DNA of 64,000 nt from the NCBI GenBank assembly GCA_965240325.2, contig OZ251226.1:1984001-2048000 (forward strand), in the 5' to 3' direction. The notes beneath the pieces are model-generated. The model had not been told where the DNA came from. It was given only the letters and a program-made list of their open reading frames with translations, and searched no databases. Both the position numbers and the translations under genes were made by a program. This DNA comes from Rebecca billardiae RCC1528. Lineage: Eukaryota > Protista > Haptophyta. Shown here piece after piece: positions 1,705 through 42,895 of the stretch (its first letter is position 1; each line of letters begins with the position of its first letter).

Positions 1705-2142
1705 GATCAATCAGCGGTCAGAGGAATACGCCGAGCAACGGAGAGTAGTTCGCGACGTCTACTCGTATCGGATTATATTCGGCCTGCGATTATTAGTCGT
1801 GATGAACGTATACTGAACGTTAAGATGGCTGTCCGAATTTGATGAATCACTGACATTGATTAATTATGATAGACACTAGACAGACTCTGCTGCCAACGTT
1901 CGCGGCGGTACAATGGTCATCTGCCTCTTGACTTCGCGGCGATCGTCGGTAGGGAATTGTGGAGCAGCTGATCCTAGGTCTGGGGGATCCGTTATTTATT
2001 AGTTATTACCGAATCCGAAGGCGGCGTGGGTCCACGATCTGAGTGCGGCAGCCAGTCGAGTGAGTCAGTGCGCGCATCATCAACGCGCGCAGCCCGGTGC
2101 TGTGAAGGCGCGGAGCATGAAAGCCCGCGAGGCGTCGGCTCC

Positions 2143-2553
2143 TCAGGGGAAGGGCGTGTGGACCGGCAGGTTCAGCACGGATCGGAAGGGCGGGTAGTCA
2201 TACGTGATGACTTGCCTGAAGCTGTCAAAGATGGGGCTGCCGCCGATGATGCCGATGTCGTTGAGCGTCTGCTTGAGCTCAATGTCGATGAGCTTTTCTG
2301 TCACGACCTCCTCGCCGAGGTACAGCCGAAGACCCTTAATGCCCACCGAGTGGCGTGCCTGCAGCTGCTGCACGATCTTGGAGACCGGCTCGTCGACCGA
2401 CATGCGCGTGGTGAATCGCATCGACTTCCACGTGGCGTTGCAGATCTCCACGTTCACATATTTTGTGGGTGGGGGTGCCTTCACGTCCTCCTTCGCGGCG
2501 TCGCTCTTCTTCTTCTTCTTCTTCCCACCGGTGGCCTTCTTCTTTGCCGGCAT
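2143..2553 (-). CDS. Small (136 aa) protein with Lys-rich N-terminus and probable ubiquitin-like beta-grasp domain
   Basis: MPAKKKATGGKKKKKK...YVNVEICNATWKSMRFTTRMSVDEPVSKIVQQLQARH..LRLYLG...KQTLNDIGI..VITYDY. Spacing and the TLxDxGI motif are ubiquitin-like. It is the last 136 codons of track ORF 2143..3726. Confidence 0.75.
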   Translation of the reverse strand: MPAKKKATGGKKKKKKSDAAKEDVKAPPPTKYVNVEICNATWKSMRFTTRMSVDEPVSKIVQQLQARHSVGIKGLRLYLGEEVVTEKLIDIELKQTLNDIGIIGGSPIFDSFRQVITYDYPPFRSVLNLPVHTPFP

Positions 2554-2805
2554 TCCGCTCGGCTGGGACGGGCACTCGCACTGGGCAGGTGGGGCGCGAG
2601 CGGGGTGTTTCACGAGTGTTCCGCCGCCATGGGCTACAGTACGCTCTACACTGGGTTCGGTAACGACCGTAGTAACGAAAATCGGCAGCCATCCTGACGT
2701 GGCGCGGCCCCGGACTCGCGCCAATCGACACGGCGGTGGAGCGCCGCCCGCCGCGAGGGGCTCCCTCCCCCACGGGCCGCGCCCACGCGCGCGCCAGCGG
2801 GCGCC

Positions 2806-5800
2806 ATGGAGGCGCCCCTCTTCTCGACCAACCTGGACAACTCCAAGCTGAGCGTGGACACCATCGTCACCGACAACAAGTCGGTGCTCACCCGCTTCGA
2901 GCTGCAGTCGCACGCGGACGTCAGGCTGCGCATCGAGCTGCGCTCGACGATGGGCGAGCAGCTCGGCTTCCAGAACACGAACGCGAACGTGGTGGGCGAG
3001 ACGGAGGAGTCGGAGGAGTCGGACGACGACTACAACGAGCTCTTCAATCAGGTCAACCAGATCGACCACGTCGAGCTCGGCCCGCGCGAGGCGCAGACGG
3101 TGATCGTCACCTTCCGGCCGCGCTCGCTGCAGCAGAGCTCGCTGCAGCACAGTTACGGCTTCGAGCGCGACGGCGACTTCGTCGAGCCGAGCCGGCAGCT
3201 GGGCAGCGCGTTCAGCGGGCACGCGCTCGCGTGGGGCCCCAAGCAGCAGTACCACATCAGCGAGTGCACGGGCACCATCTTCTTGCACGCGCGCGAGATC
3301 GGCGACGGCGCCGGTGGGCCCGCGGCTGAGCCGGAGGCGGACGTGCGGCAGCAGCAGCTGGTGCTCGAGTTCGTCGCGCGCGTGTGCTCGTCGGTGCTGG
3401 CGACGGACGTGCGCGAGCTGATCCTCGACGAGTGCGCGCCCGGCCGCACCTCCGTCAAGGACTTCACCATCTGGAACCGCTCCGAGGTGCCGGTGCAGTA
3501 CGCGCTGCGCTCCAAGGACGGTCGCGGCGAGCTCGCGTTCGCGGCGTACGACACAGGCGAGCCGATCGACGACGAGTCGGACGGCGGGCGCGAGATCCGC
3601 GGGTTTTCGCACGAGCGCATCCGGCTGACCTACGCCCCGCCCGCCGACGCGAGCGGCGAGCTCGTGTACACGGTCGAGGTTGAGAACCTTCTCAACCTGC
3701 AGAACGTGGCGAGCATCGCGGTGCACTGCACGGTCAACGCGGTCGCGGTGCAGGAGACTCTAGCCGTGATGGCGGGGGACGCGCCCGTCTCGATCCTCGA
3801 CTTTGGCGACTGCTACGCCATGGCGATGACGTCGCGGCTCATCACGCTGCGCAACGTCTCCGACGCGCCCCTCGACGTCAGCCTCCACACCGACCTGCCG
3901 CACGAGCTCGGCTTCGAGCTGCGCACGGAGACGTTCGCGCGCCGCGGCGGCGCGCCGCGCTCGGGCGGCTCGTGCGTCGGCTCGCTCGACTCGGGCGACT
4001 CGCTGGACGACGGCGAGGGGGACGACGACGAGCCGGAGGCCATCGCCGAGCGCGAGGCGATGGCGTCGCTCGCCGCGCGCGGCGCGACGGTCGTCGGCGC
4101 CCCGCGCACGCCGACCGCACCGCGCGCTCTCGCGGTGACGCCGCCCTCGCCCTCGACGCCCGCGAGCGAGCGCGGCGGCGCGCGCGGCGGGCGCACGCCG
4201 CGCACGCCGCCGGCCGACGGGCTCGACGACCTCTCGCCGCCGCCGCTCGGCGCGGTGGGCCCCGGCCTGCGCCGCTCGTCCGGCTCGCTGCGCATGCGCG
4301 GCGCCGCCGACCGCCCCGGCGGCGCGCTCGGCGGGCCGAGCGAGGACGAGGGCGGCGGCGGCGGCGGCGGCGCGGCGGGCGGCAGTCGCGCCGAGGCGCA
4401 CGGCTGCGATCCGAGCGCCGGCGGCGCGGCGGCGCTCGAGCCGTACCGCCCTTCGGGCCCGCGGCGCATCGACGCGAGCGGGCGCGCGCGCGACGCGCAC
4501 AAGCTCGGCGCCGCGAGCGGCGCCGGCCCGAAGCACCGCATCGAGGAGCTCACGCTCGAGCCGGGCCGGGAGGCAGAGCTGTGGGTTCGCTACACGCCGC
4601 GCGCGAGCACGCCGCGTGACGGCGGCGGCGCGTCCGACGGCGCCGCGGCCGCGGCGGCGGACTCGGCGCTGGACGAGAGCGGGAGCTCGCCGCCGCCGGG
4701 CGTGGGCGCGGCCGACGCCGTGCCCGAGCTCAGCGTGCAGCTCATGCGCCGCACCTTCCGCCTCACCTTCAAAGTCGCGTCGGCGGGGACGGTCCAACCT
4801 TTGATGCGCTCGATCGCGTGCGTCGCGCGCGTGTGCACGTCCGTGGTACGCGCCGCCAAGCCCGAGGTGCACTTCGGCGAGGTGGACGTGCTGTCGGCGC
4901 GCACGGCGGTGGTGAAGGTGGAGAATCTCGCCGAGCTCCCCGCGCACGTCGCCGTCCAGTTCCACTCCAAGGCGCTCCGCTGCCGCGAGGAGTCGTTCCA
5001 CGTGCCCGCGCGCGGCACACACGAGCTGCTCTTCGACTTCCGCCCGCGCCGGCCGAACGCGGCCTACTCGAAGCAGGTGACGCTGGTGAACACGCGGAAC
5101 CGGCACAACGAGGTGACGCTCTCCTTCTTCTCCAACAACATCGACCCGCACAACGTCTCGATCCACCAGCTCTTCTACCGCCTCGCCCTCGGCTCGCCCC
5201 TGCTATCGCCGGCGGCGCTCGTCGCGTCGGCCGCGGGCGCGCCCGGCGGCGGCGGCTCGCTCGGCGGCGGCGGCGCGAAGCACAAGCTGCTGCCGGCCCT
5301 CGGCGCGCACGCGCACATGCACGCGCGCTCGGCGGGGCCGGGCGGCGTGCCGCCCGCCGGCGCCGCCGGCGGCAGCAGCACCGGCGGCGCCGGCGGCGCC
5401 GCCGGCTCGGGCGGCGCCCGCCCGGATGAGGCGGGCGCGCTCAACGCCGGCGTGCCGTTCGAAGACGTGATCGAGCACGCCGCGTCGGTGCGGCTGCTCA
5501 CCGTGACGAACATCACGGCGAAGGTGCTCGCTCTTAGGCTCGACTCGTCGGCGCCCGCCGACGTGGCCGTGTACTCGCTCGCGGCCGCGCGCGCGCCGCG
5601 CGCCGCGAGCGCGCGCGAGGGCGAGGCCGTCCCCGGTGCGAGCGCGCTCGGCGCGCCGCTCGCCCTCGCCCAGCCGCCGCGCGCCGCGTGCGCCGCGCCG
5701 CTCGGCGTGGCGTGCGGCGGCGTTGGCGGGGGCGGCGTGAGCGCGGGCGCGCCGCCCGAGCTCCCGCCGCCCCCGCTCTCGCTCAGCCCTTCAGGCACGT

Positions 5801-7452
5801 CGAGCGCTTGCGGCTTCTCAGCACAGCTCGAGCGCATCCGGCGCGGGCGGGTGCAAACCGACAAGCGCGAGCTGCTGCTCGAGTCGATGGAGGAGCGGCG
5901 GGTGCGGCCGCCGATGCAGGGCGCGGCGCCGGGCGGGCCGCAGGGGAGCGTGGGCGGCGCGGGCGGCGGCGCGGGCGGCGGCGCGGGCGGCGCGGAGGTC
6001 GGCGGCGGCGACGGCGCGGCCAGCTCGGTCGCATCAGCGGCGGGCGTCGCAGGTGGCTCTTCAGACGGCGTGCGCGCGCACCTGTCGAGGCTCAGCCTCG
6101 ACCTGGCTCTGTACCAGCACACGCCCATCTCGAGCGGGCTGGGTGGTGGTGGCGGCGCTGGCGGCGGCGCCGCCGCCGCAGGCGCTCCGTCGCTCTCGGC
6201 GGCCGCGCACACCGCCGCCGCTGCAAACGCCGCGGCGGCGGCGGGCGGCGGCGGCGCCGACGGCGGCTGGGAAGGCGGCGCGGACGCGCCGCGCGCGCGC
6301 TCGGGGTCTGCGACCTCGCGCATGCTCAACCTGCTCCTCGGCGGCTCGGCCGCGGGTGGCGCCGCCGCGGTCTCCGTCTCCGCCCCGAAGGACCTCGGCT
6401 CGCCCGGCTGCTGCGGCGGCGGCGCCGTCTCCGCCGCGGCGGGCGGGAGCGACCCCACAGACGGCGGTCCGTCGCGTGCCTCGCCGTTCTCGTCGCGCTC
6501 CGGCACGCCGCCGCACGGCGCGGGGGGCTCGGCCAGCGCGGACGGCGGCGCCGCCGGCGCTACCGCTCGCAGCGTGCACGGCTTTGGAAGCGTGCCCGGC
6601 GGCGGCGGCAGCGGCGGCGGCGCGGAGGGCGTCGGCGGCGCAGCCGCCGTGCCGCTGCGGCTGCAGCGGCAGTCGTCGTTACCGAACCTGACCGACGCGG
6701 CCGACGGCGGCGCGGACGCGCTCGACGGCGGTGCAAGGGCGGAGGCGGGCGCGCGCGCGGTGGGCGCCGACGCGGCGCGCTCGGCCGGTGGCGTCGGCGC
6801 GTGGAACGCGAGCGGGCCGGCCAGTCCGAGTGGCGCGGCGCCCGCGGCGCGCGGCGGCAGCCCGGGAGCCGCCGCCGATCTCGCCGAGTCTGCCGCCGCC
6901 GGCACCGCCGCCGTAGGCGCGGGCGCGGGCAGGCCCGGTGGCGGCGGCGGCGGGGCCGTGGCGCGCGTGGTCGCGCGCTCGCGCGAGGCTCCGTGGTCGG
7001 ACGGCAGTCGGCCGGCGGGCGGCGTGGCCGCGGCGGGCGCGGGCGCACTCATCGCGGAGGGCGCAGGCGGCGCGCGCGGCGGGTCGGGCGAGGCTGGCCA
7101 GCCCGCGGGCGGGCTCGTGCTCGGCGTGACCGAGCTGCGCTTCCTGTGCGAGGCGTGCGCGGAGGTGCACGCGCAGCCGAGGGCCGTGCACGCCGCCTCG
7201 CTCGCCGTGAAGGCGGTCGGGCACCACGCGGGCCAGCGGCAATTCTCCTCACACGCCCTCTCGTGCAAGCTGGGCGCAGCCATGCTGGCGTGGCGCCGCG
7301 CAAAGGCGTCGGCGGCGGCGCCCACCGAGATCGCCGCGGCCGCGGCCGACGCCGTGCTGCGCGGCGCGCGGGACGACGACCTGGAGGCGCGCTTGGAAGC
7401 CAGATTCGCCTCGGCGAGCTCGGGGCCAGACGGCGGCGGCGCGGCGGCGCTC

Positions 7453-7500
<48 letters not shown>

Positions 7501-9363
7501 GGCGGCGGCGGCGCGGCGCCGTCGAGCGCCGAGCTGGAGGAAGGTGTCGTGCGGCTGGTCGGGCTGATCCACTCGCTGGTCGAGCGCGCGCTGCTCGACG
7601 GCGCGCTCGTGCCGCTGCGCACCCTCGCGCTCGAGCCCGCCGAGAGCGCGGACGTGGTCGTTGTCGTGTATGCGAGCGGCGCGGCGGCGCTGGAACAAGA
7701 GGCGGCGGCGGCAGCGGCGGCGGCCGCGGCGGCGGCGGCAGCGGCGCGCAGCGGCGCGGGCGCGGGCGCGGTGGCGGGCGCGCGCGAAGGGTCGCCGCCC
7801 GCGCGCGCGCCCGCGGCGGACGAGGGCGCGGCGTGCGCGACGGCGCTCGCCGCGCCCGTCGGCGGCGCCGGCGCGCACGCGGCCGGTGGCGGCGGCGGCG
7901 GCGGCGCGCACGGCGGCGCGTCCGCGCTCTCAGGCCCACGGCCGTTGTCGGAGCAGCTGCACATTCGGATGCTGCAGTACGACGACCACGTGTTCAGGGA
8001 CCACCAGCGCCGGATGGAGAAGCGCGCGTCGATCGCGTGGCGCCCGCTCCGCCTCGTGCCCGAGCAGGGCGGCTCGGCGGCGCTCGCACAGACGCCCGCA
8101 CCCGTGCCCACCTCTCCGCCGGTGCGCTCGCTGCCGCTCACCGGCCGCGTCGTCCGCTCTCGGCTTGGCATCGACCAGCGGCACATCAACTTCGGCACGC
8201 GGATGGCGGGGGACAACACCGAGCGCACGCTCGTGCTGCACAACCGCTCGGCCGTGCCGCTCGTCTTCAAGCTGATCAAGACGGGCTCGAACGCGTCGTT
8301 CGACCTTCACGTCTCGCGCAGCGCGCGGCACGGCATCATCCGGCCGCACTCGTCGCGGCCGCTGCAGCTCGCCTTCAGGCCGACGCTTCCGGGCACGTTC
8401 CTCGACACGCTGTCGGTGCTGAACGTGCTCGACCCGACGGACCGGGTGGTGATCAGCGTGAAGGCCTTCGTCGCGCGGCGCGGCACCTTCGCCGCCACGC
8501 TCGCCGGCGGCGGCACCACCGTCGACTTTGGCTCGTGTTCGCCCGGCGAGCGCTCGCCGTGCGCCGCGCGGCTGCTGCTGACTAACACCACCAAGGGGCG
8601 GCGCACCTACCTGGTCTGCCTGGACGAGGGCGCGCTCGCGCTCGGCGCGGCGGACGCGGGCGAGGCGGCGCGCGCCGCGGCGCGCGCGCTCGCGCCCGAC
8701 GGCCTGAGCGGCACCCTCGAGGTCGACCTCGTCTCGACCGCGCCCGCGCCGGGCGCGGCGGGCGGCGCGGGCGGCGCGGGCGGCGCGGCGGGCGCGGGCG
8801 TCGACGAGACGTCACGCGCCGAGCGGGTGGAGCACCTCGAGCGGAAGATCCGGATCGCGCAGCGCAAGGGGAAGCCGGAGAAGGCGGAGAAGCTCGCGCG
8901 GCAGCTGCGCGTGCTGCTCTCCGGCGGCGCGCCCGACGGCGAGCCCGCCCCCTCCGACACGGACGCGAACGAATCAGACGTGGGCGTGTCAGAATCAGAC
9001 GACGAGGGCGCGCTGCGCGCGCGCTCGCGCTCGCCCGCGCCGATCGCGCGGCGCACGGCGTCGACGTCGGGCGGCGCGGCGGCGCACGGCGCGAGCGGCG
9101 GCGCCGGCCGCGCCGCGCACCTCGTGCGCATCGCCGTCGACGGCCTCACGATGCAGACGCTCGACGTCGTGCTTCGACTCAGCCTGCGCCCGCCGGCCGC
9201 GGCCGCGGTCGCCGCTGCGGCCGGCGGCGCGCACGCGTGCGCTGACGCCGGCTCGCCGGCCCTGCACCTGAGCACGGGCGTGCTCGCGGTGCGCGGCCGG
9301 CTGCTCGTGTACGACGGCCGCGACGCGCCGAGCGCCGGCACGGCTGTGGCCGCGCCCGCGCCC

Positions 9364-34540: not shown

Positions 34541-36314
34541 CTACATCAGATCGGTCTGCTTGTCCAGCTGCTCGCCCGTCAGCCACGCGGTGTGGAACCC
34601 AAACGGCACGCGCCGGGGCAGCTGCACCACAGCTGCGAGGCTCAGGTCCCGCGCGGCGTACAGCCGGAACTGCGACGTGTTGCGGGCCTCGTCAAACACG
34701 ATCAGACCGAGATGCCCGCGGTCCTCATCGGCGCCGCGGGTCGGTGAGCCCAGCGGGTCGGCACGGCCTGGTGGCACGTACGACGCTTCGCCGCCGAGCA
34801 TCCCGGCGCCCAGTGGCGCGCGGGCGACTGCCGCGCGCTCGACCAGGTCGTACTTGACCAGCGCATCGAAGCCAACGCGGCCGCTCCGGTCGAAGCTCGC
34901 CACGTACGCGTACCGGTTGGGCGCGCCGGCGAACGCATCGTTGATGCGCGGGAACTCGAAGGGCTGCGCCCAGCTGTGGCGCTGCAGCTGCGCCGTGGCG
35001 GCGTCGGCGTCCAGGACGACGGTCACCATCGAGCACGTCGTCTCCGAGCCCGAGCCGTCGAGGAAGCCCGGGTCGAACACGTCGTACCAGCAGCCGTGGA
35101 CGAGCACGCGCCGCCCCCCCTCCTCCTCCCACGCGTTGGCCACGTGGAAGATGTGCCCGGCCGCGTCCAGCGAGCACCAGACAGCCGGGGATGCGGCAGC
35201 ACTGCCGGCGGGCTCGCCGGCCTCGAGCGCCGCGCGCGGCACGAGGCCGAAGCGCGCGTGCGCGCCGCGCTCCCAGTAGATGCTCCTGCCGCGCTGCACG
35301 ATCCCCTGCGGGTGCGCGCGCAGCGAGCCGTCCAGCAGGATCACCCAGGACGCCGAGATCGCCATCTCGTGCATGAAGGGCATGCCGATGCCTTCGGACG
35401 CCGACGGGAGCGGCACTGGCAGCGGCGCGGAGAGGCGGCCGTCCGCGCTGATCTGGCGCACGGTGACGGGCCTCGTCTCGGGCGCGTCCGGCCCCGCCCA
35501 CGCGCACACGAACACGAGCGCGCCCGTCCGCGGGTCGAGCTTGGGGTGCGCGGTCATGCAGTGTGCGAGCCGGCCGCCCAGAGAGTCAAAGCCCGCGCTC
35601 GAGATCTCCCCGCGCTCGCGGCCGATGCGCACGCGCAGCGGCAGGTTGGGCTCGACGAGGGCCCACACGCGGTCGCGGAAGAAGATCACATTCGTGTTCG
35701 CCACCGACGAGCGCTCGAAGGGCAGCTCGGGCACGGCGCCGACCCTCTGCCAGAACAGCTCGAGGAGCAGCTTGAGCAGCCCAACGGCGCCGCTCTGCAT
35801 GTCGCCGATCTTGGAGTAGAGCGCACGGCCGGCGCGGCGCTCGGCGGCGAGGCGCGGCGTGCGCACGAACGCGTTGCAGTAGTGCGCCACGCCACCGCGC
35901 ACGCGCACCGTGTGCAGGTGGCCGTCGCCGTCAAACCTGGGCCGCGCGGCGTGGCGCGGGTGATGAGGCGTCGCGTGAGAGGTGAGCGTGGGAGCCGCGA
36001 GGTGTGTGCGGCCATCGAACGCACCAGTGGTACTTGCCCCGGGGCGGCAGAGCCGGGTTGGGCCCCTGCCTGATGAACACACCGTCGATGTCGGCCGGGA
36101 TGGCGCCCTCGATCACGGGCAGGTCCGAATCACACCGCTCGTCATGCACGGGCGCAAAGTTACCGTGCAGGTAGGGGTTGTTCGCCGTGTGATTGTGCGT
36201 GCCGTCGAGCGCGTTGAGTATGGCGGTCAGCGGCGAGTACTTGGGCGACGTCAGCGCGATGGCAACCATGCCCACCACAGCACCTGTCCGCCACGGCAGC
36301 GCGGCCACACCCAT
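34541..36314 (-). CDS. CCD: Carotenoid cleavage dioxygenase (CCD/RPE65 family), ~561 aa; exons 36314-36025 and 35936-34541
   Basis: NPYLHGNFAPVHDE, GAIPADIDGVFIRQGPNP; intron 36024-35937 (GTGCGT..CCCAG) restores HWFDGDG; four Fe-ligand His contexts TAHPK, FMHEMAIS, FHVANAWE, PFGFHTAW; EFPRIND. Confidence 0.93.
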
Positions 36315-36650
36315 GGCGGTCGGCACCGCGGCAGGGCTCTGGATCCCTCACCACACTTCTTTCATCACACACCCATGGCTCTCTTGTCTTCCCGCCGCCG
36401 TCCAAAATCCTCTGCAGCACGACTGCACGAGGCTGCGCGGATTTCGTGATGCATGATTTCGTCGCGCGCACGCGCGGGCGCGGCGCCCGCGCGGGCAACG
36501 GTCTCGGGCTCGCCGGCGGCCGGCCGCGGAAAAAAAAAGAATCGCGACGAATATCCGATCGAGACGTCTTCGGAGGTCGGACGGGCTCCGACGTCGAAAC
36601 CCGTCACGCACGCCCGTCCAGCAGCTTGCCCGTCCAGAGTCACCGCACTC

Positions 36651-39600
36651 ATGTCCTCCAGCTCCCTCGACGGCGACGATCGCATCTCCGCGCATCCCAG
36701 CTCTACGCTCGAGCCCCGCCAAGACACCACCAACCGCGTCAATGCTTCCGCACACCGCGACAACGCGCCCACCGCCGATGGCGAGGCCAACAGCCACATC
36801 ACGGAGCGCGCCGCCGCGGCGGGCGGCCCGGAAGACGAACGCCACGTGCGCTTCGACGTTGCGCTCGTGTTCGCGCGCGCACACTCAAGCTCTTTCGAGG
36901 GCCACGCACCCAACGCGCCCTCGCGCGACGTGCTCGTCCGCCGGCTGCGCGCCATCGGCCTGGGCGTGCGCGAGCTGGCAGCCATCGATGCGCTGAACGA
37001 GCACAAGCACCTGTTGCTGATCGGCGCGACTGGCGCGTGGCTCGAGCTCGCGGCCGAGCGCGCAAGGCTGCGCCTCCGCCTCCGCGCGGAGTACGGCGGC
37101 GGCTACGCCGCCTTCACGCGCGAGCGCGCGCACATGTTCGTCCCGGCGCGCGCTGACGGCGGCGCGGCGTCCGCGCTGCTGCACTCTGCGCAGCGCGCCG
37201 CGCTTGTCGAGCGAGCCCTCGGCGCGCCGAGGCACGAGGAGGGCGCGGAGGTCGACCTGGCGGCGCTGCGGCGCGGCGGTGGCTTTGAGCGCCAGATGCG
37301 CCTCCACGACCCGCGCGAGCGCCGCGGCCTCGAGGCGCGCGTCGGAGAGGGCTCGCTGATCGGCGCAGATGCGCTGCCCGCGCGCCGCCTGCGTTCGTAC
37401 TTGGGCGCGGAGCAGAGCGAATATTTGGCGCTGCAGCACCGGATGTCCCGCGCGCTCTGGCTGCCGGCGAGCGTGGGCGTCCTGCTCGCCGCGCTCGAGG
37501 CGGGCGTGAGCGCCTCCGGCGCGGGCGTGCTCACCCCTCTGTACTCGCTGCTGCTGCTTCTCTGGGCCTCTGCGTTTGTCGAAGGCTGGCGGCGGCGCGA
37601 GGCGGCGCTCGCGGCGGAGGCGGAGGCGGCGGAGGGCGCGGAGGCCGAGCGCGGCGGCGGCACGCGCGCCGAGTTCGTCGGCGAGCTGCGCCGCGGGCTC
37701 ATCGCCCCAGCCACGCCCACCGCGCCCGGCGGCGGCGCGGTGGCGGACGGCGGCGCGCTGGCCTTTGCGCCCGTCGCCCTCTCGGAGCTGCCCAGCGGCA
37801 TGCTCGCGCCCGTCGTCGAGGTGGCGCCGGCGGGCGAGGCGTGGCGGCGCGCGGCAGGCTCCGCCGCGTTGGTCACGCTCGCGCTCGGCGCGACGTGCAC
37901 GTGCGCCCTCGCGCTGCTCGCGCTCCGCGTCGCGCTCACGCGCGCGGCGGGCGCAGCTGGCATGCTCGGCGGCGCCGCGCTCAACTCCGCTTACGTCGAG
38001 CTGGTCGAGCGACTGTTCGCGCGGGGCGCCGAGCGGCTGACGGCGTGGGAGAACCACCGGACGCACGCGACGCACCGCGCACACCTCATCGCGAAGCTCG
38101 TCGCCTTCTCCGCCGTGCACCGCTTCTTCGCCCTCTTCTACGTCGCGTTTGCGCGCGGCCGCGGCGCGCTGCTGCCTGGCTCGGGCGCGGACGCGGACGC
38201 GTGCGTGCATTGGAGCGCCGCGGGCGCGGCGGAGGGCGGGTGCATGGACGAGCTGCGCATGCAGGTGCTCGTGCTCACACTCGGCCGCTCGCTCGCCGCG
38301 CTTGCCATCGAGCGAGCCGCGCCACTCTGGGAGCGCCGCCGCGCGTGCGAGCGCGACGCGGCCGACGCGGCCCGGCGCGCGGGGCTCGAGCGGCGCGCAG
38401 CGTGCGAGCTCCGCCTGCGTGCGTCCGAGCCGGTCGACGGCGCGATGAACGCGCTCGCGTGCGACTTTGCGACGGTCGCGCTGTTCGCGACGGCGTTCCC
38501 GCTCGCGCCCGTCCTCGTCCTCGTGAACAACTTCAACTCGATGCGCGGCGCGATGCTCCGCTCGCTGCGGCTGCGCGCGCGCCCGTCCGCCGCCGCCGCG
38601 GACGAGGCCGCCGCGCGCGCCGGCGCAAGCACCTGGAGCCATGTCTTGAGCTCCATCAGCTACCTCGCGGTGGTGACGAACTTTGCGATCCTCGCGTTCA
38701 CCTCGCGGCACCTCGACGCCGTGGTCGCGCTGAGCGACAGCGCCAAGCTCATCCTGCTCATCGTGATCGAGCACGCCGTGCTGCTGGCGAAGGCGGCGGT
38801 GGCGCACGCGCTCCCCAGGCTGCGGCCGGCGCTCGCGGCCGCGATTGCCAAGCGGCAGTGGCTGGCGCGCGCGTGGGCGGAGGACGAGCGGCCGGCGTAC
38901 GCGAGCGTGTCGGGCTGGGTGGAGGAGGACGCGGCGCTGCGCGCCGAGGGCATCGACCTCGACCTCGGCGCGGACGCAGACGGCTCGGACGGCTCGCAGG
39001 CCGACTCTGCGGAGGCGGAGGATGAGGGGCGCGCCGCGGCCGGTGGGTCGTGCGGCGGCGGCGGCGGCGCCGCCGCGGCCTCGCTGCACGCGGAGCTGCT
39101 CGCGCCGCCGGACGCGCCGCCCGACGACGAGGAGCACCGCGAGGGCTGGACGCCGTTCAACGCCCTCGTCGCGCGCCGCGCGCCGCGGCAGTGCACGGAC
39201 GTGCTCTGCGTGCTGCTGCTTCTGCTCACGTTCGGAGCCCTGGTGACGCTCACGACGGTCGGGCATGTCGTCGGCCCACTGAGCGCGCTGAGCGCGGGGC
39301 GGGACACGCGCTTCGACCTGTGCGGCCACGCGCTGCCCGCGGCGCGGCTGGACGCGCGGCTGCTCGCGCGAGACGCGAGCACCCCGCCCGCCGCCCCCGT
39401 CGCCTCGGCGGGCGCCGACCGCACGGCCACGCCGCAGCTTTTCCTCGCAGACCCGGCGCGTCACGTGGGCGTGTGCGTGCGAGCGTGCCCGAGTCCCGCG
39501 CGCGCCGCGGACGGCTTCGAGCCGTCCGCGCTGGTGTGCACGCCCGAGTGCGAGGGTCTGGAGGGCGAGGCGCGCGCCGGTGCCCTCGGCACGTGCTGCT

Positions 39601-41987
39601 TCCCCGCCTACGCCTCGACCGCCGTCAACGGCTACTGCCGGCCGGACGACGGCGTGCGCGCCACCGACCTCGCGGCCGCGTGGGCGCGCGCGCCGCTGCC
39701 GGCTGGCGCCCGCCGCTCCTGGCCGTCGGACGTGGAGCTGGAGAGCGTGCGCGAGCTGACGGCGTCGGCGGGCAAGGGCGTGGGCGACGCGTTCGCCGAC
39801 CTCGCGCGCACCTGGCGGCTGCTCGTCGGCTGCGGCGTCGGCGCCTTTGTCCTCGGCGCCGCGCTGGCCGCGCGATTTGAGCGCGCGCCAGTGAGCACGG
39901 TCATCGCCGCGCTTGTGCTGGCCATTGTGGGCGGCGCGGTGGTGACGGGCGCGCTGTGGGCGGCGGGCGAGCGCGAGATGCGCGAGCACTACGCCGAGCC
40001 GGACTCGCCCGCGTACCGCAACGCGCACTCCGTCGCGGTCTTCGGCTACATGGCCTGCGTCGCGACGGCGGTGGGCACCTTCGCTTCCTTCTTCGCCTCG
40101 TCGACCGTGGTCGTGCGGATTGGGCACGCGACCGCCGAGGTGCGCGAGGCGCTGGGCGCGGTGCCCGCGCTGCACGCGCTGCCCGCGCTCGGCGCGCTGG
40201 GCACGCTGTGCGTGCTGCTCTGGTGGTTCTTCACCGCCGCGCACCTCGCCGCGTCCGGCGAGCTCCACCTCGCCGCCGGCACTGGATTCCCCCTGCCCAC
40301 GTTTGATTCCGCGCTGATGCGGCTGCTCGCTGCGCACGCGCTCGCCGGCCTCCTGCTGCTCTCGCTCGTGCAGCACGTGCTGCGCATGGCGGCGGCGGCG
40401 GTCGCGGCGTCGTGGTACTTCCGGCGCAGCCTTCCCACCGCCGCGCCCGCAGCCGGCGGCGCCAAGCGCGGCGCGGCCGGCGAGGCGGCCGACGGCTCTG
40501 CCGAGCGCGACGACGACGAAGACAGCGCGCTGGCGCTGCCTCCGGAGCCGACCGCACGCGCGGCGCTCTGGTTCGTTTGCCGGTACCACCTCGGCTCGGC
40601 GGTGTACGGCGCGCTCGTGCTACCGCTCACGCGGCCGATTCGCGCCGTCGCGTGGCTCTTCCGACCGTGCCGCCTCGGCGCGACCCCCAGCGCCGAGCGC
40701 GGCGAGCCGGACCCGCTGAGCGCGTGCTGCGGCACGTCCGGCGCTGCCGACGCTCTGTTTGCACTCAGCGCGGACGCGTACGCCGTGGTCGTCGCCGCCG
40801 ACCTGCCGCTGCTCACGTCGGCGCTGGCGACGTGGCGGCACCAGCTGCGCCAGCCGAACACGTGCGCCGCGCACACGCAGCAGGCTGCAGACGTGTGCTT
40901 CTTCGCTCTCAAGCTCGCCGGCGGCGCGATCGCGTCAGCCGTCGCGGCTGCGGTCCTGACCAGCGCCACTGTGGGCATGGGCCAGCAGCTGGGCGCGTCC
41001 CTGCTCTGGCCGATCGCCATCGCCTTCGTGCTCGGGTGCGCGCAGCCCGCCGCATCGCCCCTCCACCCCGCCCAAGCACGCACGCAAGCCCCGCTTCGGT
41101 GCGCCTGCACTCACCGCGGCCGCGCCCACACCGCGCGCCTCCGCCCTCCGTCCATCCGCCACCCTCGGCCCGAGCGCAGATACCTGGCCGTCTCCCAGTT
41201 TGTGCTCGTGCACGAGGCGGTGCTGTCGGCGCTGACGGCGTGCTACATGCTCGACGTGCTGCACAACTCGGCGCACGCGCTGCACGCCTCGGCCAACATG
41301 CGTCACATCTTCACGCCCGGACGGCGCCCGGGCTGGATGGCACCGGCACCGGCGCGCGGCGGTCTGCAGGGCAGGCCCGCGGCCGCGGGCTGGCCCCTGG
41401 CCGGCCGGTCCGCCAAGCCTGGGGCCCCGCCCGAGGCCGGTCTCGCAGAGTCGGCAGCCGCGACTACTCTCGAGCGCGACGCCTCCGCCGCTGGCGCCAG
41501 CTCCCTCGCCTCCGCAGCGTCGGCCGTGTCCGCAGGCTACCCGCGCGAGCCCACGCCACCGTCGCCGCCGCCCTCGCTCGAGCCGCCCGCGGCCTCCCTC
41601 TTGAAGGGGCGGCTCTTCTCGGCAGAGCCCGAGCGGCGGCCCGAGCCGGAGGAGCCTGCCCATGCCGCGGGCGCAGCACGCCCTGCCGAGCCACCCTTCG
41701 CCCCGCCCCAGGAGTACCCCGCCGCCTCCCTCGCGCACCACGCCGGGCCGTACGGTCAGCAGGCCTCCTCTGGCGCTGAGCAGCACGCTGGCAGCGAACC
41801 GGCCGCAGCCGCAAGCCTCCGAGGAGCGGAGTTTTACCCGCCACCGCAGTCTCGACGACACCACGCGCAACGACAGCAGCCACCGCGCTTGTCGCCCGCG
41901 CGGGGTGACGACTGGCAGGGCGACCAGGGCGTGCCTTCTCCGCCTGCTGTCGTCGCAGAGTCCTCCACGTCTTCGTTCTATCTCTGA
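36651..41987 (+). CDS. Anoctamin (TMEM16)-like domain fused to a choline transporter-like (CTL/SLC44) domain, ~1730 aa; probable in-frame intron 41036-41179
   Basis: TMEM16 motifs: LRSYLGAEQSEYLA, LTAWENHRT..LIAKLVAF, FFALFYVAF, CMDELRMQV, LFATAFPLAPVLVLVNN, WSHVL..ISYLAVVTNFAILAFTS. CTL motifs: RQCTDVLCVLL, GRDTRFDLCG, VCVRACP, RYHLGSAVYGALV, DAYAVVV, FVLVHEAVLSALTACYMLD. Single open frame. Start could be further upstream (36453). Confidence 0.85.
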   Translation: MSSSSLDGDDRISAHPSSTLEPRQDTTNRVNASAHRDNAPTADGEANSHITERAAAAGGPEDERHVRFDVALVFARAHSSSFEGHAPNAPSRDVLVRRLRAIGLGVRELAAIDALNEHKHLLLIGATGAWLELAAERARLRLRLRAEYGGGYAAFTRERAHMFVPARADGGAASALLHSAQRAALVERALGAPRHEEGAEVDLAALRRGGGFERQMRLHDPRERRGLEARVGEGSLIGADALPARRLRSYLGAEQSEYLALQHRMSRALWLPASVGVLLAALEAGVSASGAGVLTPLYSLLLLLWASAFVEGWRRREAALAAEAEAAEGAEAERGGGTRAEFVGELRRGLIAPATPTAPGGGAVADGGALAFAPVALSELPSGMLAPVVEVAPAGEAWRRAAGSAALVTLALGATCTCALALLALRVALTRAAGAAGMLGGAALNSAYVELVERLFARGAERLTAWENHRTHATHRAHLIAKLVAFSAVHRFFALFYVAFARGRGALLPGSGADADACVHWSAAGAAEGGCMDELRMQVLVLTLGRSLAALAIERAAPLWERRRACERDAADAARRAGLERRAACELRLRASEPVDGAMNALACDFATVALFATAFPLAPVLVLVNNFNSMRGAMLRSLRLRARPSAAAADEAAARAGASTWSHVLSSISYLAVVTNFAILAFTSRHLDAVVALSDSAKLILLIVIEHAVLLAKAAVAHALPRLRPALAAAIAKRQWLARAWAEDERPAYASVSGWVEEDAALRAEGIDLDLGADADGSDGSQADSAEAEDEGRAAAGGSCGGGGGAAAASLHAELLAPPDAPPDDEEHREGWTPFNALVARRAPRQCTDVLCVLLLLLTFGALVTLTTVGHVVGPLSALSAGRDTRFDLCGHALPAARLDARLLARDASTPPAAPVASAGADRTATPQLFLADPARHVGVCVRACPSPARAADGFEPSALVCTPECEGLEGEARAGALGTCCFPAYASTAVNGYCRPDDGVRATDLAAAWARAPLPAGARRSWPSDVELESVRELTASAGKGVGDAFADLARTWRLLVGCGVGAFVLGAALAARFERAPVSTVIAALVLAIVGGAVVTGALWAAGEREMREHYAEPDSPAYRNAHSVAVFGYMACVATAVGTFASFFASSTVVVRIGHATAEVREALGAVPALHALPALGALGTLCVLLWWFFTAAHLAASGELHLAAGTGFPLPTFDSALMRLLAAHALAGLLLLSLVQHVLRMAAAAVAASWYFRRSLPTAAPAAGGAKRGAAGEAADGSAERDDDEDSALALPPEPTARAALWFVCRYHLGSAVYGALVLPLTRPIRAVAWLFRPCRLGATPSAERGEPDPLSACCGTSGAADALFALSADAYAVVVAADLPLLTSALATWRHQLRQPNTCAAHTQQAADVCFFALKLAGGAIASAVAAAVLTSATVGMGQQLGASLLWPIAIAFVLGCAQPAASPLHPAQARTQAPLRCACTHRGRAHTARLRPPSIRHPRPERRYLAVSQFVLVHEAVLSALTACYMLDVLHNSAHALHASANMRHIFTPGRRPGWMAPAPARGGLQGRPAAAGWPLAGRSAKPGAPPEAGLAESAAATTLERDASAAGASSLASAASAVSAGYPREPTPPSPPPSLEPPAASLLKGRLFSAEPERRPEPEEPAHAAGAARPAEPPFAPPQEYPAASLAHHAGPYGQQASSGAEQHAGSEPAAAASLRGAEFYPPPQSRRHHAQRQQPPRLSPARGDDWQGDQGVPSPPAVVAESSTSSFYL

Positions 41988-42895
41988 CCGTGTACGTCGG
42001 GGTGACAGGCGATGTCGTGATGTGTATCCATATACTAGTGATATAGCGTCGTCAACCGCTGACGTGTAAAGACACCGCGCCACTGTCGTTACTGCTAGCT
42101 ACTGCTCAGATCAGGGACGAGCGCGTTGGCACCGGAAGGCAGCTGCGAAAGACGCCGCGGGCCGCGCGTCACAGCTGAATCACCAGAATGGCGCAGCAGC
42201 TGCGAATCGAGCTCGGCTGGCTCGCCAAGCAGCCGGTGCGCGTGAAACGCCGAGATCGAATCTAACGAGTCGGTAGCTTTGACGAGCCTCCTTAGTGAGC
42301 GGATATACTGTCATACTGCAGCTTTGTCGCCTGGCTGCAGCAGACGAGTCGCGTAGATGAAAGCCAATAAATAAGCCAATCGATGACGGATGAGCTGCAT
42401 GGAATATTGCTGGACGACCGAGGTCGTAGTCATTGATGAATCATATACACGCTAGTAGCTGCTTGTATGCGATGCTTATTGATGGCGGAGATGGTGAGCG
42501 CTCTGTGGTGATTGCTCCGTTGCCAGCGAAATGATCGATGGCGCGGATTAATTTGCATAGCGCATGTGTCCGCCATGATGCTGTAGGCGCAAACAGTCAT
42601 ATAGTACTTATAGCGCGCGCTTCACCAGAGACGTCAGACGACCGGTCGACCGATTGTCTCATCGTCAGCACGAACGACTACGCGTACCTTCGTCTGCTGT
42701 AGTCATACTCCGCAGCGCAGGATAGCTAGAACATCGTCGTCCTGATTATACACAACAGCAGTCGACGGCCACTGCCGAAAGCAGGCGCAGTTCGCCTCAC
42801 AGGAGTTATTTGCAGCCGACGGGCGGGACGGGCCGCCATCTGCGCCATGCGGAAGAGAATAAGCAGCGCAGTGGCAGGGGCCACGCTCGCCACTG

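What the first reader, a model, noticed from the sequence alone, without database searches (positions are those of the whole stretch)
36651..41987. Single-polypeptide fusion of a TMEM16/anoctamin module and a CTL/SLC44 choline-transporter-like module
Seen: one open frame carries a full set of anoctamin motifs (~36850-38870), an acidic linker (DLDLGADADGSDGSQADSAEAEDE), then a full CTL module (~39180-41270) starting RQCTDVLC. There is no stop or frameshift between them. Established: TMEM16 proteins are lipid scramblases/channels; SLC44/CTL proteins move choline or ethanolamine; these families are normally separate genes. Inference: a dual-function membrane protein could couple head-group import to lipid scrambling or remodelling (e.g. 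choline or betaine lipid metabolism). I know of no described fusion of this kind.
Basis: partly seen in the sequence, partly recalled or inferred. Interest (0 to 1): 0.9.

Follow-up and report, generated by a model that had tools for sequence, protein, structure and literature searches.

The report
Scramblase–CTL fusion gene, haptophyte-wide
One gene really does encode a TMEM16/anoctamin membrane module joined to a choline-transporter-like (SLC44) module; the same fusion is kept across haptophyte algae but has not been written up, and it links the disputed CTL family to lipid scrambling.

Summary
Window 36651-41987 (+) is one uninterrupted frame. It has a complete Pfam Anoctamin match (E 9e-57) and a Choline_transpo match (E 2e-17). 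The two are joined by an acidic, predicted-disordered 112-residue linker.

The linker is coding:
- Third-codon-position GC stays at 0.92-0.98 across it.
- No in-frame ATG lies between nt 38553 and 39978.

The same architecture, usually with N-terminal ankyrin repeats, occurs elsewhere:
- as unbroken frames or single exons in a paralogue from the same genome, in Diacronema lutheri and in metagenomic contigs;
- as a spliced gene model in Chrysochromulina tobinii, with intact 1964-residue relatives in C. parva's protein cluster;
- as a partial model in Pavlovales sp. CCMP2436.

So this is an old, conserved haptophyte fusion, not a read-through of two genes.

The window copy is the fast-evolving duplicate. 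It has no ankyrin repeats, and all four TM7/TM8 Ca2+-binding acidic residues are replaced (A, A, S, A). Its CTL half stays conserved.

I found no paper that describes the fusion. Two 2026 studies argue that CTL1 is a phospholipid-binding, membrane-deforming protein rather than a choline transporter, so fusion to a scramblase is a useful functional clue.

No RNA data could be obtained for this genome. The scan had already noted an ankyrin-anoctamin-CTL fusion on another piece of this genome (s1-353129).

The parts
36651..41987 (+). Coding sequence of the fusion gene. The likely start is the ATG at 36651; an upstream in-frame ATG at 36453 lies in sequence with weak codon periodicity. Stop codon at 41985-41987. 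About 1730 aa after removal of one in-frame intron.
   Evidence: An identical 1778-aa ORF call (P0001) exists on a Logan contig of run ERR14847148.
36651..37391 (+). N-terminal cytosolic region ahead of the TMEM16 membrane domain. It aligns with the pre-TM region of the orthologues but has no ankyrin repeats.
   Evidence: Pfam finds only two families in this protein. Alignment A1. A divergently oriented RPE65-family gene ends at 36314, leaving no room for upstream ankyrin exons.
37392..38849 (+). TMEM16/anoctamin ten-helix membrane module.
   Evidence: Pfam PF04547, E 9.1e-57. phmmer to solved TMEM16K, TMEM16F and TMEM16A. AlphaFold model pLDDT mostly 85-95, and Foldseek top hit human TMEM16K, E 1e-13, TM-score 0.57 by target.
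38442..38552 (+). TM7-TM8 stretch where the Ca2+-coordinating acids are replaced: A664, A667, S696 and A700 stand in place of E667, E670, E699 and D703 of mouse TMEM16F.
   Evidence: Pairwise alignment to chain 8bc0. All 12 other fusion sequences that cover these positions keep E/D there, apart from Q at the first position in P0008/P0159.
38850..39185 (+). Cytosolic linker of 112 aa: net charge -15, rich in Ala and Gly. It ends in a conserved R...W-x-P...L segment that belongs to the CTL N-terminus.
   Evidence: GC3 0.92-0.98. No in-frame Met. Composition. pLDDT below 50 for ORF aa 835-914. Invariant R, W, P and L columns in alignment A1.
39186..41312 (+). CTL/SLC44 module: the R-x-C-T-D motif and TM1, a Cys-rich extracellular domain, then the remaining membrane helices. 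It is interrupted by the intron listed below.
   Evidence: Pfam PF04515, E 2e-17. A profile of the CTL halves matches human CTL1 (7wwb, 9qu3) at E 1e-28 over residues 22-608, and yeast Pns1. The only significant Foldseek hits of the CTL-half model are Pns1 and CTL1.
41036..41179 (+). Probable spliceosomal intron, 144 nt (48 codons, in frame, GT...AG), read through by the raw ORF.
   Evidence: Sequence. The 48 residues are an insertion absent from all orthologues. The D. lutheri gene has its only intron (124 nt) at the same position. Codon periodicity is weaker here.
41313..41984 (+). Pro/Ala-rich C-terminal tail of low complexity. Its coding status is less certain towards the end.
   Evidence: Translation. 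GC3 falls from about 0.9 to about 0.7 by 41800-41990.

Best explanation
SHOWN. This is a genuine single gene for a polypeptide of about 1730 residues and about 20 membrane helices. It runs from a TMEM16/anoctamin module, through a cytosolic acidic disordered linker, into a CTL/SLC44 module. TMEM16 ends in the cytosol and CTL1 begins in the cytosol, so the join is topologically compatible. The gene belongs to a conserved haptophyte family whose usual form is ankyrin repeats, then TMEM16, then CTL. The window copy is the fast-evolving one of two sister paralogues in this genome. It has lost the ankyrin repeats and all four TM7/TM8 Ca2+ ligands, while its CTL half remains constrained.

INFERRED. 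Because the tether is kept across the sampled haptophyte lineages, I think the two modules act on the same patch of membrane lipid. The CTL half would recruit or bind phospholipid head-groups and thin the bilayer, as recently proposed for human CTL1. The TMEM16 half would move lipids between leaflets. In the canonical paralogue this would be Ca2+-gated. In the window copy the TMEM16 half is probably Ca2+-insensitive, acting as a constitutive groove or merely as a dimerising scaffold for the CTL half.

The confidence given applies to the SHOWN part; I put the inferred lipid coupling at roughly 0.4.
For: Both Pfam families score far above their cut-offs in one frame. GC3 stays at 0.92-0.98 across the linker, and there is no in-frame ATG from nt 38553 to 39978. 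An exhaustive phmmer search finds full-length collinear matches: P0002 (51% identity, one aligned stretch over query residues 1-1165) and P0003 (39%). Both domains occur together in P0002, P0003, P0004, P0008, P0010, P0012, P0154, P0157 and P0160. These include named proteins from D. lutheri, Pavlovales sp. CCMP2436 and C. tobinii, and relatives in a cluster that includes C. parva. The junction lies in an unbroken ORF in loci L003, L004 and L006 and in a single exon in D. lutheri, with GC3 of 0.92-0.98 in the 130 codons before the CTL motif. The intron position is shared with D. lutheri. P0001 and P0002 come from the same sequencing run and are sisters in the tree (support 100/99), with branch lengths 0.97 and 0.29. 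The Ca2+ ligands are lost only in the window copy. The window copy has 15 unique changes at otherwise invariant columns in the TMEM16 half and 3 in the CTL half. The AlphaFold model shows two confident membrane domains with a disordered linker, with fold matches to TMEM16K, and for the separate CTL-half model to Pns1 and CTL1. CTL1 topology, lipid binding and lack of choline transport come from PMC13160678 and bioRxiv 10.64898/2026.10.02.755950.
Against: There is no transcript or protein evidence for this genome: no RNA run was listed. In the relative CCMP2436, the MMETSP transcripts span the junction but keep a 34-nt segment that the genome model splices out. If that segment is truly retained, the two halves are in different frames there. 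One MMETSP peptide (P0011) starts with Met only 20 residues before the CTL motif, so a stand-alone CTL product may exist in some relatives. Cleavage in the disordered linker after translation cannot be excluded. The functional coupling is inference only. Only about half of the lipid-site residues reported for human CTL1 are kept. The lost Ca2+ site and long branch could instead mean that the TMEM16 half of this copy is decaying.
Confidence: 0.8

Rival explanations
1. The fused frame is translated, but the disordered acidic linker is then cut. The cell would hold two separate membrane proteins made in equal amounts, and the fusion would serve co-expression and co-targeting only.
For: The linker is long, acidic, variable in length and predicted disordered. 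MMETSP peptides of a relative contain the CTL part alone.
Against: No cleavage motif is conserved in the linker. The MMETSP peptides are likely fragments or artefacts of ORF calling. Conservation of the in-frame tether across Pavlovophyceae and Prymnesiophyceae fits either reading.
Confidence: 0.12
2. The window copy is a decaying duplicate, a young pseudogene or one losing its TMEM16 function. Only its paralogue P0002 would carry the family's function.
For: The branch is about three times longer than the sister's. Ankyrin repeats and all four TM7/TM8 Ca2+ ligands are lost. There are 15 unique changes at otherwise invariant TMEM16 columns, and the Pfam anoctamin score is 193 bits against 314 for the paralogue.
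Against: The frame is intact over about 1780 codons, whereas the two other frames of the same stretch carry 23 and 7 stops. GC3 stays at or above 0.9 throughout both modules. The CTL half has only 3 unique changes. The TMEM16 half still models with high confidence.
Confidence: 0.12
3. One reading: the CTL half imports choline or ethanolamine, and the TMEM16 half redistributes the lipids made from them. The protein would couple head-group supply to lipid scrambling or remodelling.
For: This follows the classical annotation of SLC44 proteins. Both modules are present and conserved.
Against: CTL1, yeast PNS1 and plant CherI showed no choline or ethanolamine transport in oocytes (PMC13160678). Human CTL1 showed no choline transport in cells or proteoliposomes (bioRxiv 10.64898/2026.10.02.755950). 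The window copy lacks the Ca2+ site needed for ordinary TMEM16 activation.
Confidence: 0.2
4. These are two adjacent, separately transcribed genes that merely share a frame because stop codons are rare in GC-rich DNA.
For: Long chance ORFs do occur here, for example a 1234-codon antisense ORF.
Against: The linker shows full coding periodicity. No start codon is available for a separate CTL protein. The same in-frame join is found in at least four other independent loci and in annotated genomes.
Confidence: 0.02

Closest known systems
Unnamed haptophyte ankyrin-anoctamin-CTL proteins in public databases (D. lutheri KAG8468294.1 and KAG8459200.1; C. tobinii KOO35990.1; a C. parva EukProt entry)
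   Same: The same order of TMEM16 module, acidic linker and CTL module in one frame. The W-x-P / R-x-C-T-D junction segment is conserved. The intron position is shared with D. lutheri.
   Different: The window copy lacks the N-terminal ankyrin repeats and the four TM7/TM8 Ca2+ ligands, and it sits on a long branch. None of these proteins has been studied or described in a paper that I could find.
TMEM16 lipid scramblases and channels (human TMEM16K, mouse TMEM16F, fungal nhTMEM16 and afTMEM16)
   Same: A complete Pfam Anoctamin domain, and a predicted fold that matches TMEM16K best.
   Different: The Ca2+-binding acids of TM7 and TM8 are replaced by A, A, S, A. A second ten-helix membrane protein is attached at the C-terminus.
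CTL/SLC44 proteins (human CTL1/SLC44A1, yeast Pns1, plant CTL1/CherI)
   Same: The R-x-C-T-D motif before TM1, a Cys-rich ectodomain, and the C-terminal Choline_transpo core. Equivalents of CTL1 R457, D537, F541, K544, E591 and D604 are kept.
   Different: It has no initiator Met or N-terminal lipidation site of its own, because it is tethered to TMEM16. K491, D595 and H584 of the CTL1 lipid site are not kept. The ectodomain is divergent.

Membership tests
TMEM16/anoctamin | Pfam PF04547 match above the gathering score over the whole model | tested here: met
   193.4 bits against a cut-off of 28, model positions 2-458 of 460.
TMEM16/anoctamin | Ten-helix TMEM16 fold | tested here: met
   AlphaFold pLDDT is mostly 85-95. 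The Foldseek top 50 hits are all TMEM16 structures, the best being TMEM16K at E 1.2e-13 and TM-score 0.57 by target.
TMEM16/anoctamin | Acidic Ca2+ ligands in TM7 (E-x-x-E) and TM8 (E-x-x-x-D) | tested here: not met
   The window has A664, A667, S696 and A700. The paralogue and all other fusion proteins keep E/D there, apart from Q at the first position in P0008/P0159. The TM6 positions could not be aligned reliably.
TMEM16/anoctamin | Homodimer with lipid-scrambling or channel activity | not testable with these tools
   Needs biochemistry.
CTL/SLC44 | Pfam PF04515 match above the gathering score | tested here: met
   63.8 bits against 26.9, aa 1228-1528. The remainder of the model lies beyond the in-frame intron.
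CTL/SLC44 | Full-length collinearity with a solved CTL: N-terminal R-x-C-T-D and TM1, an ectodomain, then the helical core | tested here: met
   The profile of the CTL halves matches human CTL1 residues 22-608 of 657 in three collinear stretches, E 1.1e-28. The Cys aligned with the reported lipidated C26 is kept.
CTL/SLC44 | CTL fold | tested here: met
   The model is of modest quality (pLDDT 63). Its only significant Foldseek hits are Pns1 (E 2e-6) and CTL1 (E 2e-4); the third hit is another CTL1 chain (7wwb, E 9e-3) and every other hit has E above 0.3.
CTL/SLC44 | Residues of the phospholipid (PE1) site and polar network reported for human CTL1 | tested here: inconclusive
   Kept: R457, D537, F541, K544, L581, E591. 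Changed: K491 to D, D595 to S, H584 to S, W487 to S, E490 to A, N494 to F, Y495 to A. The mapping goes through a profile alignment.
CTL/SLC44 | Choline or ethanolamine transport | not testable with these tools
   The activity is itself disputed for the family (PMC13160678; bioRxiv 10.64898/2026.10.02.755950).
Haptophyte ankyrin-TMEM16-CTL fusion family (undescribed) | TMEM16 and CTL modules in one frame, with the conserved junction segment | tested here: met
Haptophyte ankyrin-TMEM16-CTL fusion family (undescribed) | N-terminal ankyrin repeats | tested here: not met
   No ankyrin match at E up to 0.01, and a neighbouring gene leaves no room upstream. Ankyrin repeats are present in P0002, P0157, P0160, P0010 and P0012.

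The most novel reading that the evidence does not exclude
The conserved tether is a 'Rosetta stone'. It would mean that CTL/SLC44 proteins in general work with TMEM16-type scramblases on phospholipids, through head-group recognition and bilayer thinning that feed or gate transbilayer lipid movement. Their role would then not be to import choline. That would give the current dispute over SLC44 function a natural, testable model protein.
Probability: 0.3. Interest if true: 0.8.

Novelty: new variant of a known kind. Interest (0 to 1): 0.62.

Why it matters
What SLC44/CTL proteins do is an open question. They were long called choline transporters, but two 2026 studies found no transport. One of them proposes phospholipid binding and membrane deformation instead; the other suggests only a non-transport role. 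A natural fusion of CTL to a lipid scramblase, kept across the sampled haptophyte lineages, is independent genomic evidence that the two activities belong together. It also offers a single protein in which the coupling can be tested.

The window copy adds a natural experiment: the CTL half is conserved while the Ca2+ site and ankyrin repeats of the TMEM16 half are gone.

Haptophytes are major marine primary producers with unusual membrane lipids, so the family may also matter for algal membrane biology.

Tried and rejected
- RNA evidence: the look-up of sequencing runs listed no run, so read laying was never used.
- Word-indexed protein searches: all three were swamped by Ala-rich low-complexity words. 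They returned only the query itself, one 94%-identical relative, or nothing. The exhaustive phmmer search gave the real answer.
- phmmer of the CTL half alone against solved structures found nothing. A profile of the CTL halves was needed.
- The whole-protein profile against solved structures was swamped by ankyrin hits.
- The ESM Atlas look-up gave only an ankyrin-anoctamin cluster at a lead-level score.
- I considered that part of the linker might be an intron. I rejected this because GC3 stays at 0.92-0.98 and the frame must be preserved in any case.
- I considered a P0001-specific 15-residue insertion (ORF aa about 423-437) as an intron. I rejected it because GC3 there is 0.96.
- The TM6 Ca2+-ligand positions could not be aligned consistently between the TMEM16F and TMEM16K alignments, so I make no claim about them.
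- dN/dS between the two paralogues was not attempted, because synonymous sites are saturated at 47% protein identity.
Full report
**1. What is in the sequence.**
The window is very GC-rich, 59-82% in 2-kb bins. The frame from 36453 to 41987 on the + strand has 1844 codons and no stop.

Pfam finds exactly two families:
- Anoctamin, aa 314-799, E 9.1e-57, 193 bits against a cut-off of 28, covering model positions 2-458 of 460.
- Choline_transpo, aa 1228-1528, E 2e-17, 63.8 bits against a cut-off of 26.9.

A long ORF is not evidence by itself in such DNA. The antisense strand carries a 1234-codon ORF. The two other forward frames carry 23 and 7 stops over the same stretch.

**2. Is the join real or a read-through?**
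Three lines of evidence from the window itself say it is real.
- Codon periodicity is unbroken. In every 150-nt window from 38778 to 39377, GC3 is 0.92-0.98 and GC2 is 0.48-0.66, as in both flanking domains. Periodicity fades only upstream of about 36750 and downstream of about 41800.
- No in-frame ATG lies between nt 38553 (inside the anoctamin domain) and nt 39978 (well inside the CTL module). A separate CTL protein with its first helix and ectodomain therefore could not start in this frame.
- The last part of the linker (R...W-x-P...L, then R-x-C-T-D) is invariant across the aligned relatives. It forms the normal cytosolic N-terminus of a CTL protein (compare the human CTL1 alignment).

**3. 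Relatives.**
An exhaustive phmmer search of 1.84 billion representative proteins, using ORF aa 330-1528 as query, returned two full-length collinear matches. P0002 is 1767 aa and 51% identical, with one aligned stretch over query residues 1-1165. P0003 is 1336 aa and 39% identical. Several partial matches also turned up.

Pfam and a local phmmer screen show both domains together in P0002, P0003/P0151, P0004/P0153, P0008/P0159, P0010, P0012, P0154, P0157 and P0160. Most of those that reach the N-terminus also carry ankyrin repeats.

Named members are:
- Diacronema lutheri KAG8468294.1 (1957 aa) and KAG8459200.1 (2426 aa);
- Pavlovales sp. CCMP2436 KAJ1633640.1 (partial);
- Chrysochromulina tobinii KOO35990.1 (1797 aa);
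- a C. parva EukProt entry (1964 aa), in a cluster of 55 mostly metagenomic sequences.

In loci L003, L004/L005 and L006/L007 the whole fusion is one uninterrupted ORF. There, GC3 is 0.92-0.98 in the 130 codons before the CTL motif, and the linkers of L003 and L004 contain no Met. In D. lutheri the junction lies inside a single exon covering aa 1-1777.

Among the 150 best hits, only these haptophyte-type proteins carry both domains. The fusion is thus shared by Pavlovophyceae and Prymnesiophyceae. It may be confined to haptophytes, but more distant fusions ranking below the top 150 were not excluded.

**4. Gene structure.**
The raw ORF reads through one intron at 41036-41179. It is 144 nt long with GT...AG ends, and its 48 in-frame codons are absent from every orthologue. 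D. lutheri has its only intron (124 nt) at exactly this position, between ...AFVL(G/A) and YL....

Removing the intron restores the conserved last helix of the CTL core. The mature protein is then about 1730 aa if translation starts at 36651.

A divergently oriented RPE65-family gene ends at 36314. This copy therefore has no room for upstream ankyrin exons, and Pfam finds no ankyrin repeats in it.

**5. This copy is the odd one out.**
P0002 comes from the same sequencing run (ERR14847148) as the contig identical to the window. It is therefore a paralogue in the same genome. An earlier first-stage note (s1-353129) reports an ankyrin-anoctamin-CTL fusion on another piece of this genome.

In a maximum-likelihood tree the two copies are sisters with support 100/99. 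The window copy's branch is 0.97, against 0.29 for P0002.

The four Ca2+-coordinating acids of TM7 and TM8 (E667, E670, E699 and D703 of mouse TMEM16F) are A, A, S and A in the window copy. They are E/D in all 12 other fusion sequences that cover those positions, apart from Q at the first position in P0008/P0159. This confirms note s1-360829.

At columns that are invariant in the other six full-length proteins, the window copy has 15 private changes in the TMEM16 half and only 3 in the CTL half. The paralogue has 1 and 1. The TMEM16 half has therefore been released from part of its constraint, while the CTL half has not.

**6. Folds.**
An AlphaFold model of ORF aa 330-1528 (68-sequence alignment, mean pLDDT 74.5) shows three parts:
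- a confident TMEM16 domain, with pLDDT mostly 85-95;
- a disordered linker, with pLDDT below 50 for ORF aa 835-914;
- a helical CTL domain, with pLDDT mostly 70-88.

Its Foldseek hits are all TMEM16 structures. Human TMEM16K, an ER scramblase, is best at E 1e-13.

A separate model of the CTL half (pLDDT 63) has only two significant hits (E at or below 0.001), yeast Pns1 and human CTL1. The third-ranked hit is another CTL1 chain, 7wwb. A profile of the CTL halves matches human CTL1 over residues 22-608 at E 1e-28.

CTL1 has ten helices with both termini inside the cell (bioRxiv 10.64898/2026.10.02.755950). From established knowledge of the family, TMEM16 proteins also have ten helices with both termini inside. 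The fusion is therefore topologically consistent.

**7. Literature.**
Six full-text searches found no paper that describes an anoctamin-CTL fusion. Neither recent CTL paper mentions TMEM16.

Those two papers change the context.
- PMC13160678 found no choline or ethanolamine transport by human CTL1, yeast PNS1 or plant CherI. It suggests a non-transport role.
- The October 2026 preprint found no choline transport. It reports bound PE, PS, PI and PA, and membrane thinning and curvature in simulations. It proposes that SLC44 proteins are lipid-interacting membrane proteins.

I mapped that preprint's residues through the profile alignment. The window protein keeps the equivalents of R457, D537, F541, K544, L581, E591 and the lipidated C26. 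It does not keep K491, D595 or H584.

**8. How it most likely works.**
Shown: one gene; two complete membrane modules; a cytosolic disordered tether; conservation in both haptophyte classes sampled; and loss of the Ca2+ site and ankyrin repeats in this copy.

Inferred: the two modules act together on membrane phospholipids. The CTL half would recognise head-groups and deform the bilayer. The TMEM16 half would provide the route between leaflets. This would be Ca2+-gated in the canonical form. In the window copy it would be Ca2+-independent or reduced to a scaffold.

The classical alternative is choline or ethanolamine import coupled to scrambling. It remains possible but rests on a disputed activity. 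Cleavage in the linker, or decay of this copy, cannot be excluded without RNA and protein data.

**9. Caveats.**
- No RNA run was available for this genome.
- In CCMP2436 the MMETSP peptides show that a transcript runs from the last anoctamin exon into the CTL part. However, it retains a 34-nt GT...AG segment that the genome model splices out. If the segment is truly retained, the two halves are out of frame there.
- One MMETSP peptide (P0011) begins with Met 20 residues before the CTL motif.
- The organism is inferred only from the protein tree: a pavlovophyte-like haptophyte, neither D. lutheri nor CCMP2436.

**10. Verdict.**
It is not unique to this genome. It belongs to an undescribed but database-visible haptophyte family, of which the window gene is a derived paralogue. 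Its main value is as a natural clue, and a test system, for the unsettled function of CTL/SLC44 proteins.

Noticed in passing
window 34541-36314 (-): A divergently oriented RPE65/carotenoid-oxygenase family gene, called as two ORF pieces (455 and 127 aa). It probably has an intron or a frame change. It shares an intergenic region of about 340 bp with the fusion gene.
   Followed up: no
L002 10449-10482 (Pavlovales sp. CCMP2436, MU631398.1): The genome model splices out a 34-nt GT...AG segment just after the anoctamin domain to keep the CTL part in frame. Two MMETSP transcript-derived peptides retain it, so their first ~34 residues are an out-of-frame reading of the anoctamin C-terminus. This is either an unusually short intron seen unspliced or a real frame break in that species.
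   Followed up: partly
L009 (C. tobinii JWZX01000679.1), gene 2001-7895: The NCBI model has three 'introns' of 282, 84 and 135 nt, all multiples of three and in one frame, which sum to 167 codons. That is exactly the length difference from the 1964-aa intact relatives in C. parva and in metagenomes, so these introns may be coding sequence that was wrongly removed.
   Followed up: partly
L008, L004/L005, L011: A DCN1-like gene (UBA_4 plus Cullin_binding) lies just downstream on the opposite strand of the fusion gene in D. lutheri and in two unnamed assemblies. This conserved synteny marks the ancestral locus. The window copy is instead followed by a Cys-rich repeat gene, which suggests it is the relocated duplicate.
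   Followed up: no
L004 4083-5918 and 5915-9925; L011 574-2820 and 3001-6027: In these contigs the ankyrin part and the anoctamin-CTL part are called as separate ORFs, overlapping by 4 nt in L004. This suggests a short intron or a frame change between them.
   Followed up: no
window 36885-40589 (-): A 1234-codon antisense ORF lies opposite the fusion gene. This is expected when the sense strand has GC3 near 0.95, and it is not a gene.
   Followed up: partly
P0160 / P0008 / P0011 clade: Pavlovophytes carry a second, older paralogue lineage of the fusion: D. lutheri KAG8459200.1 (2426 aa) and relatives. Their CTL halves are more divergent, with Pfam scores near or below the cut-off.
   Followed up: partly
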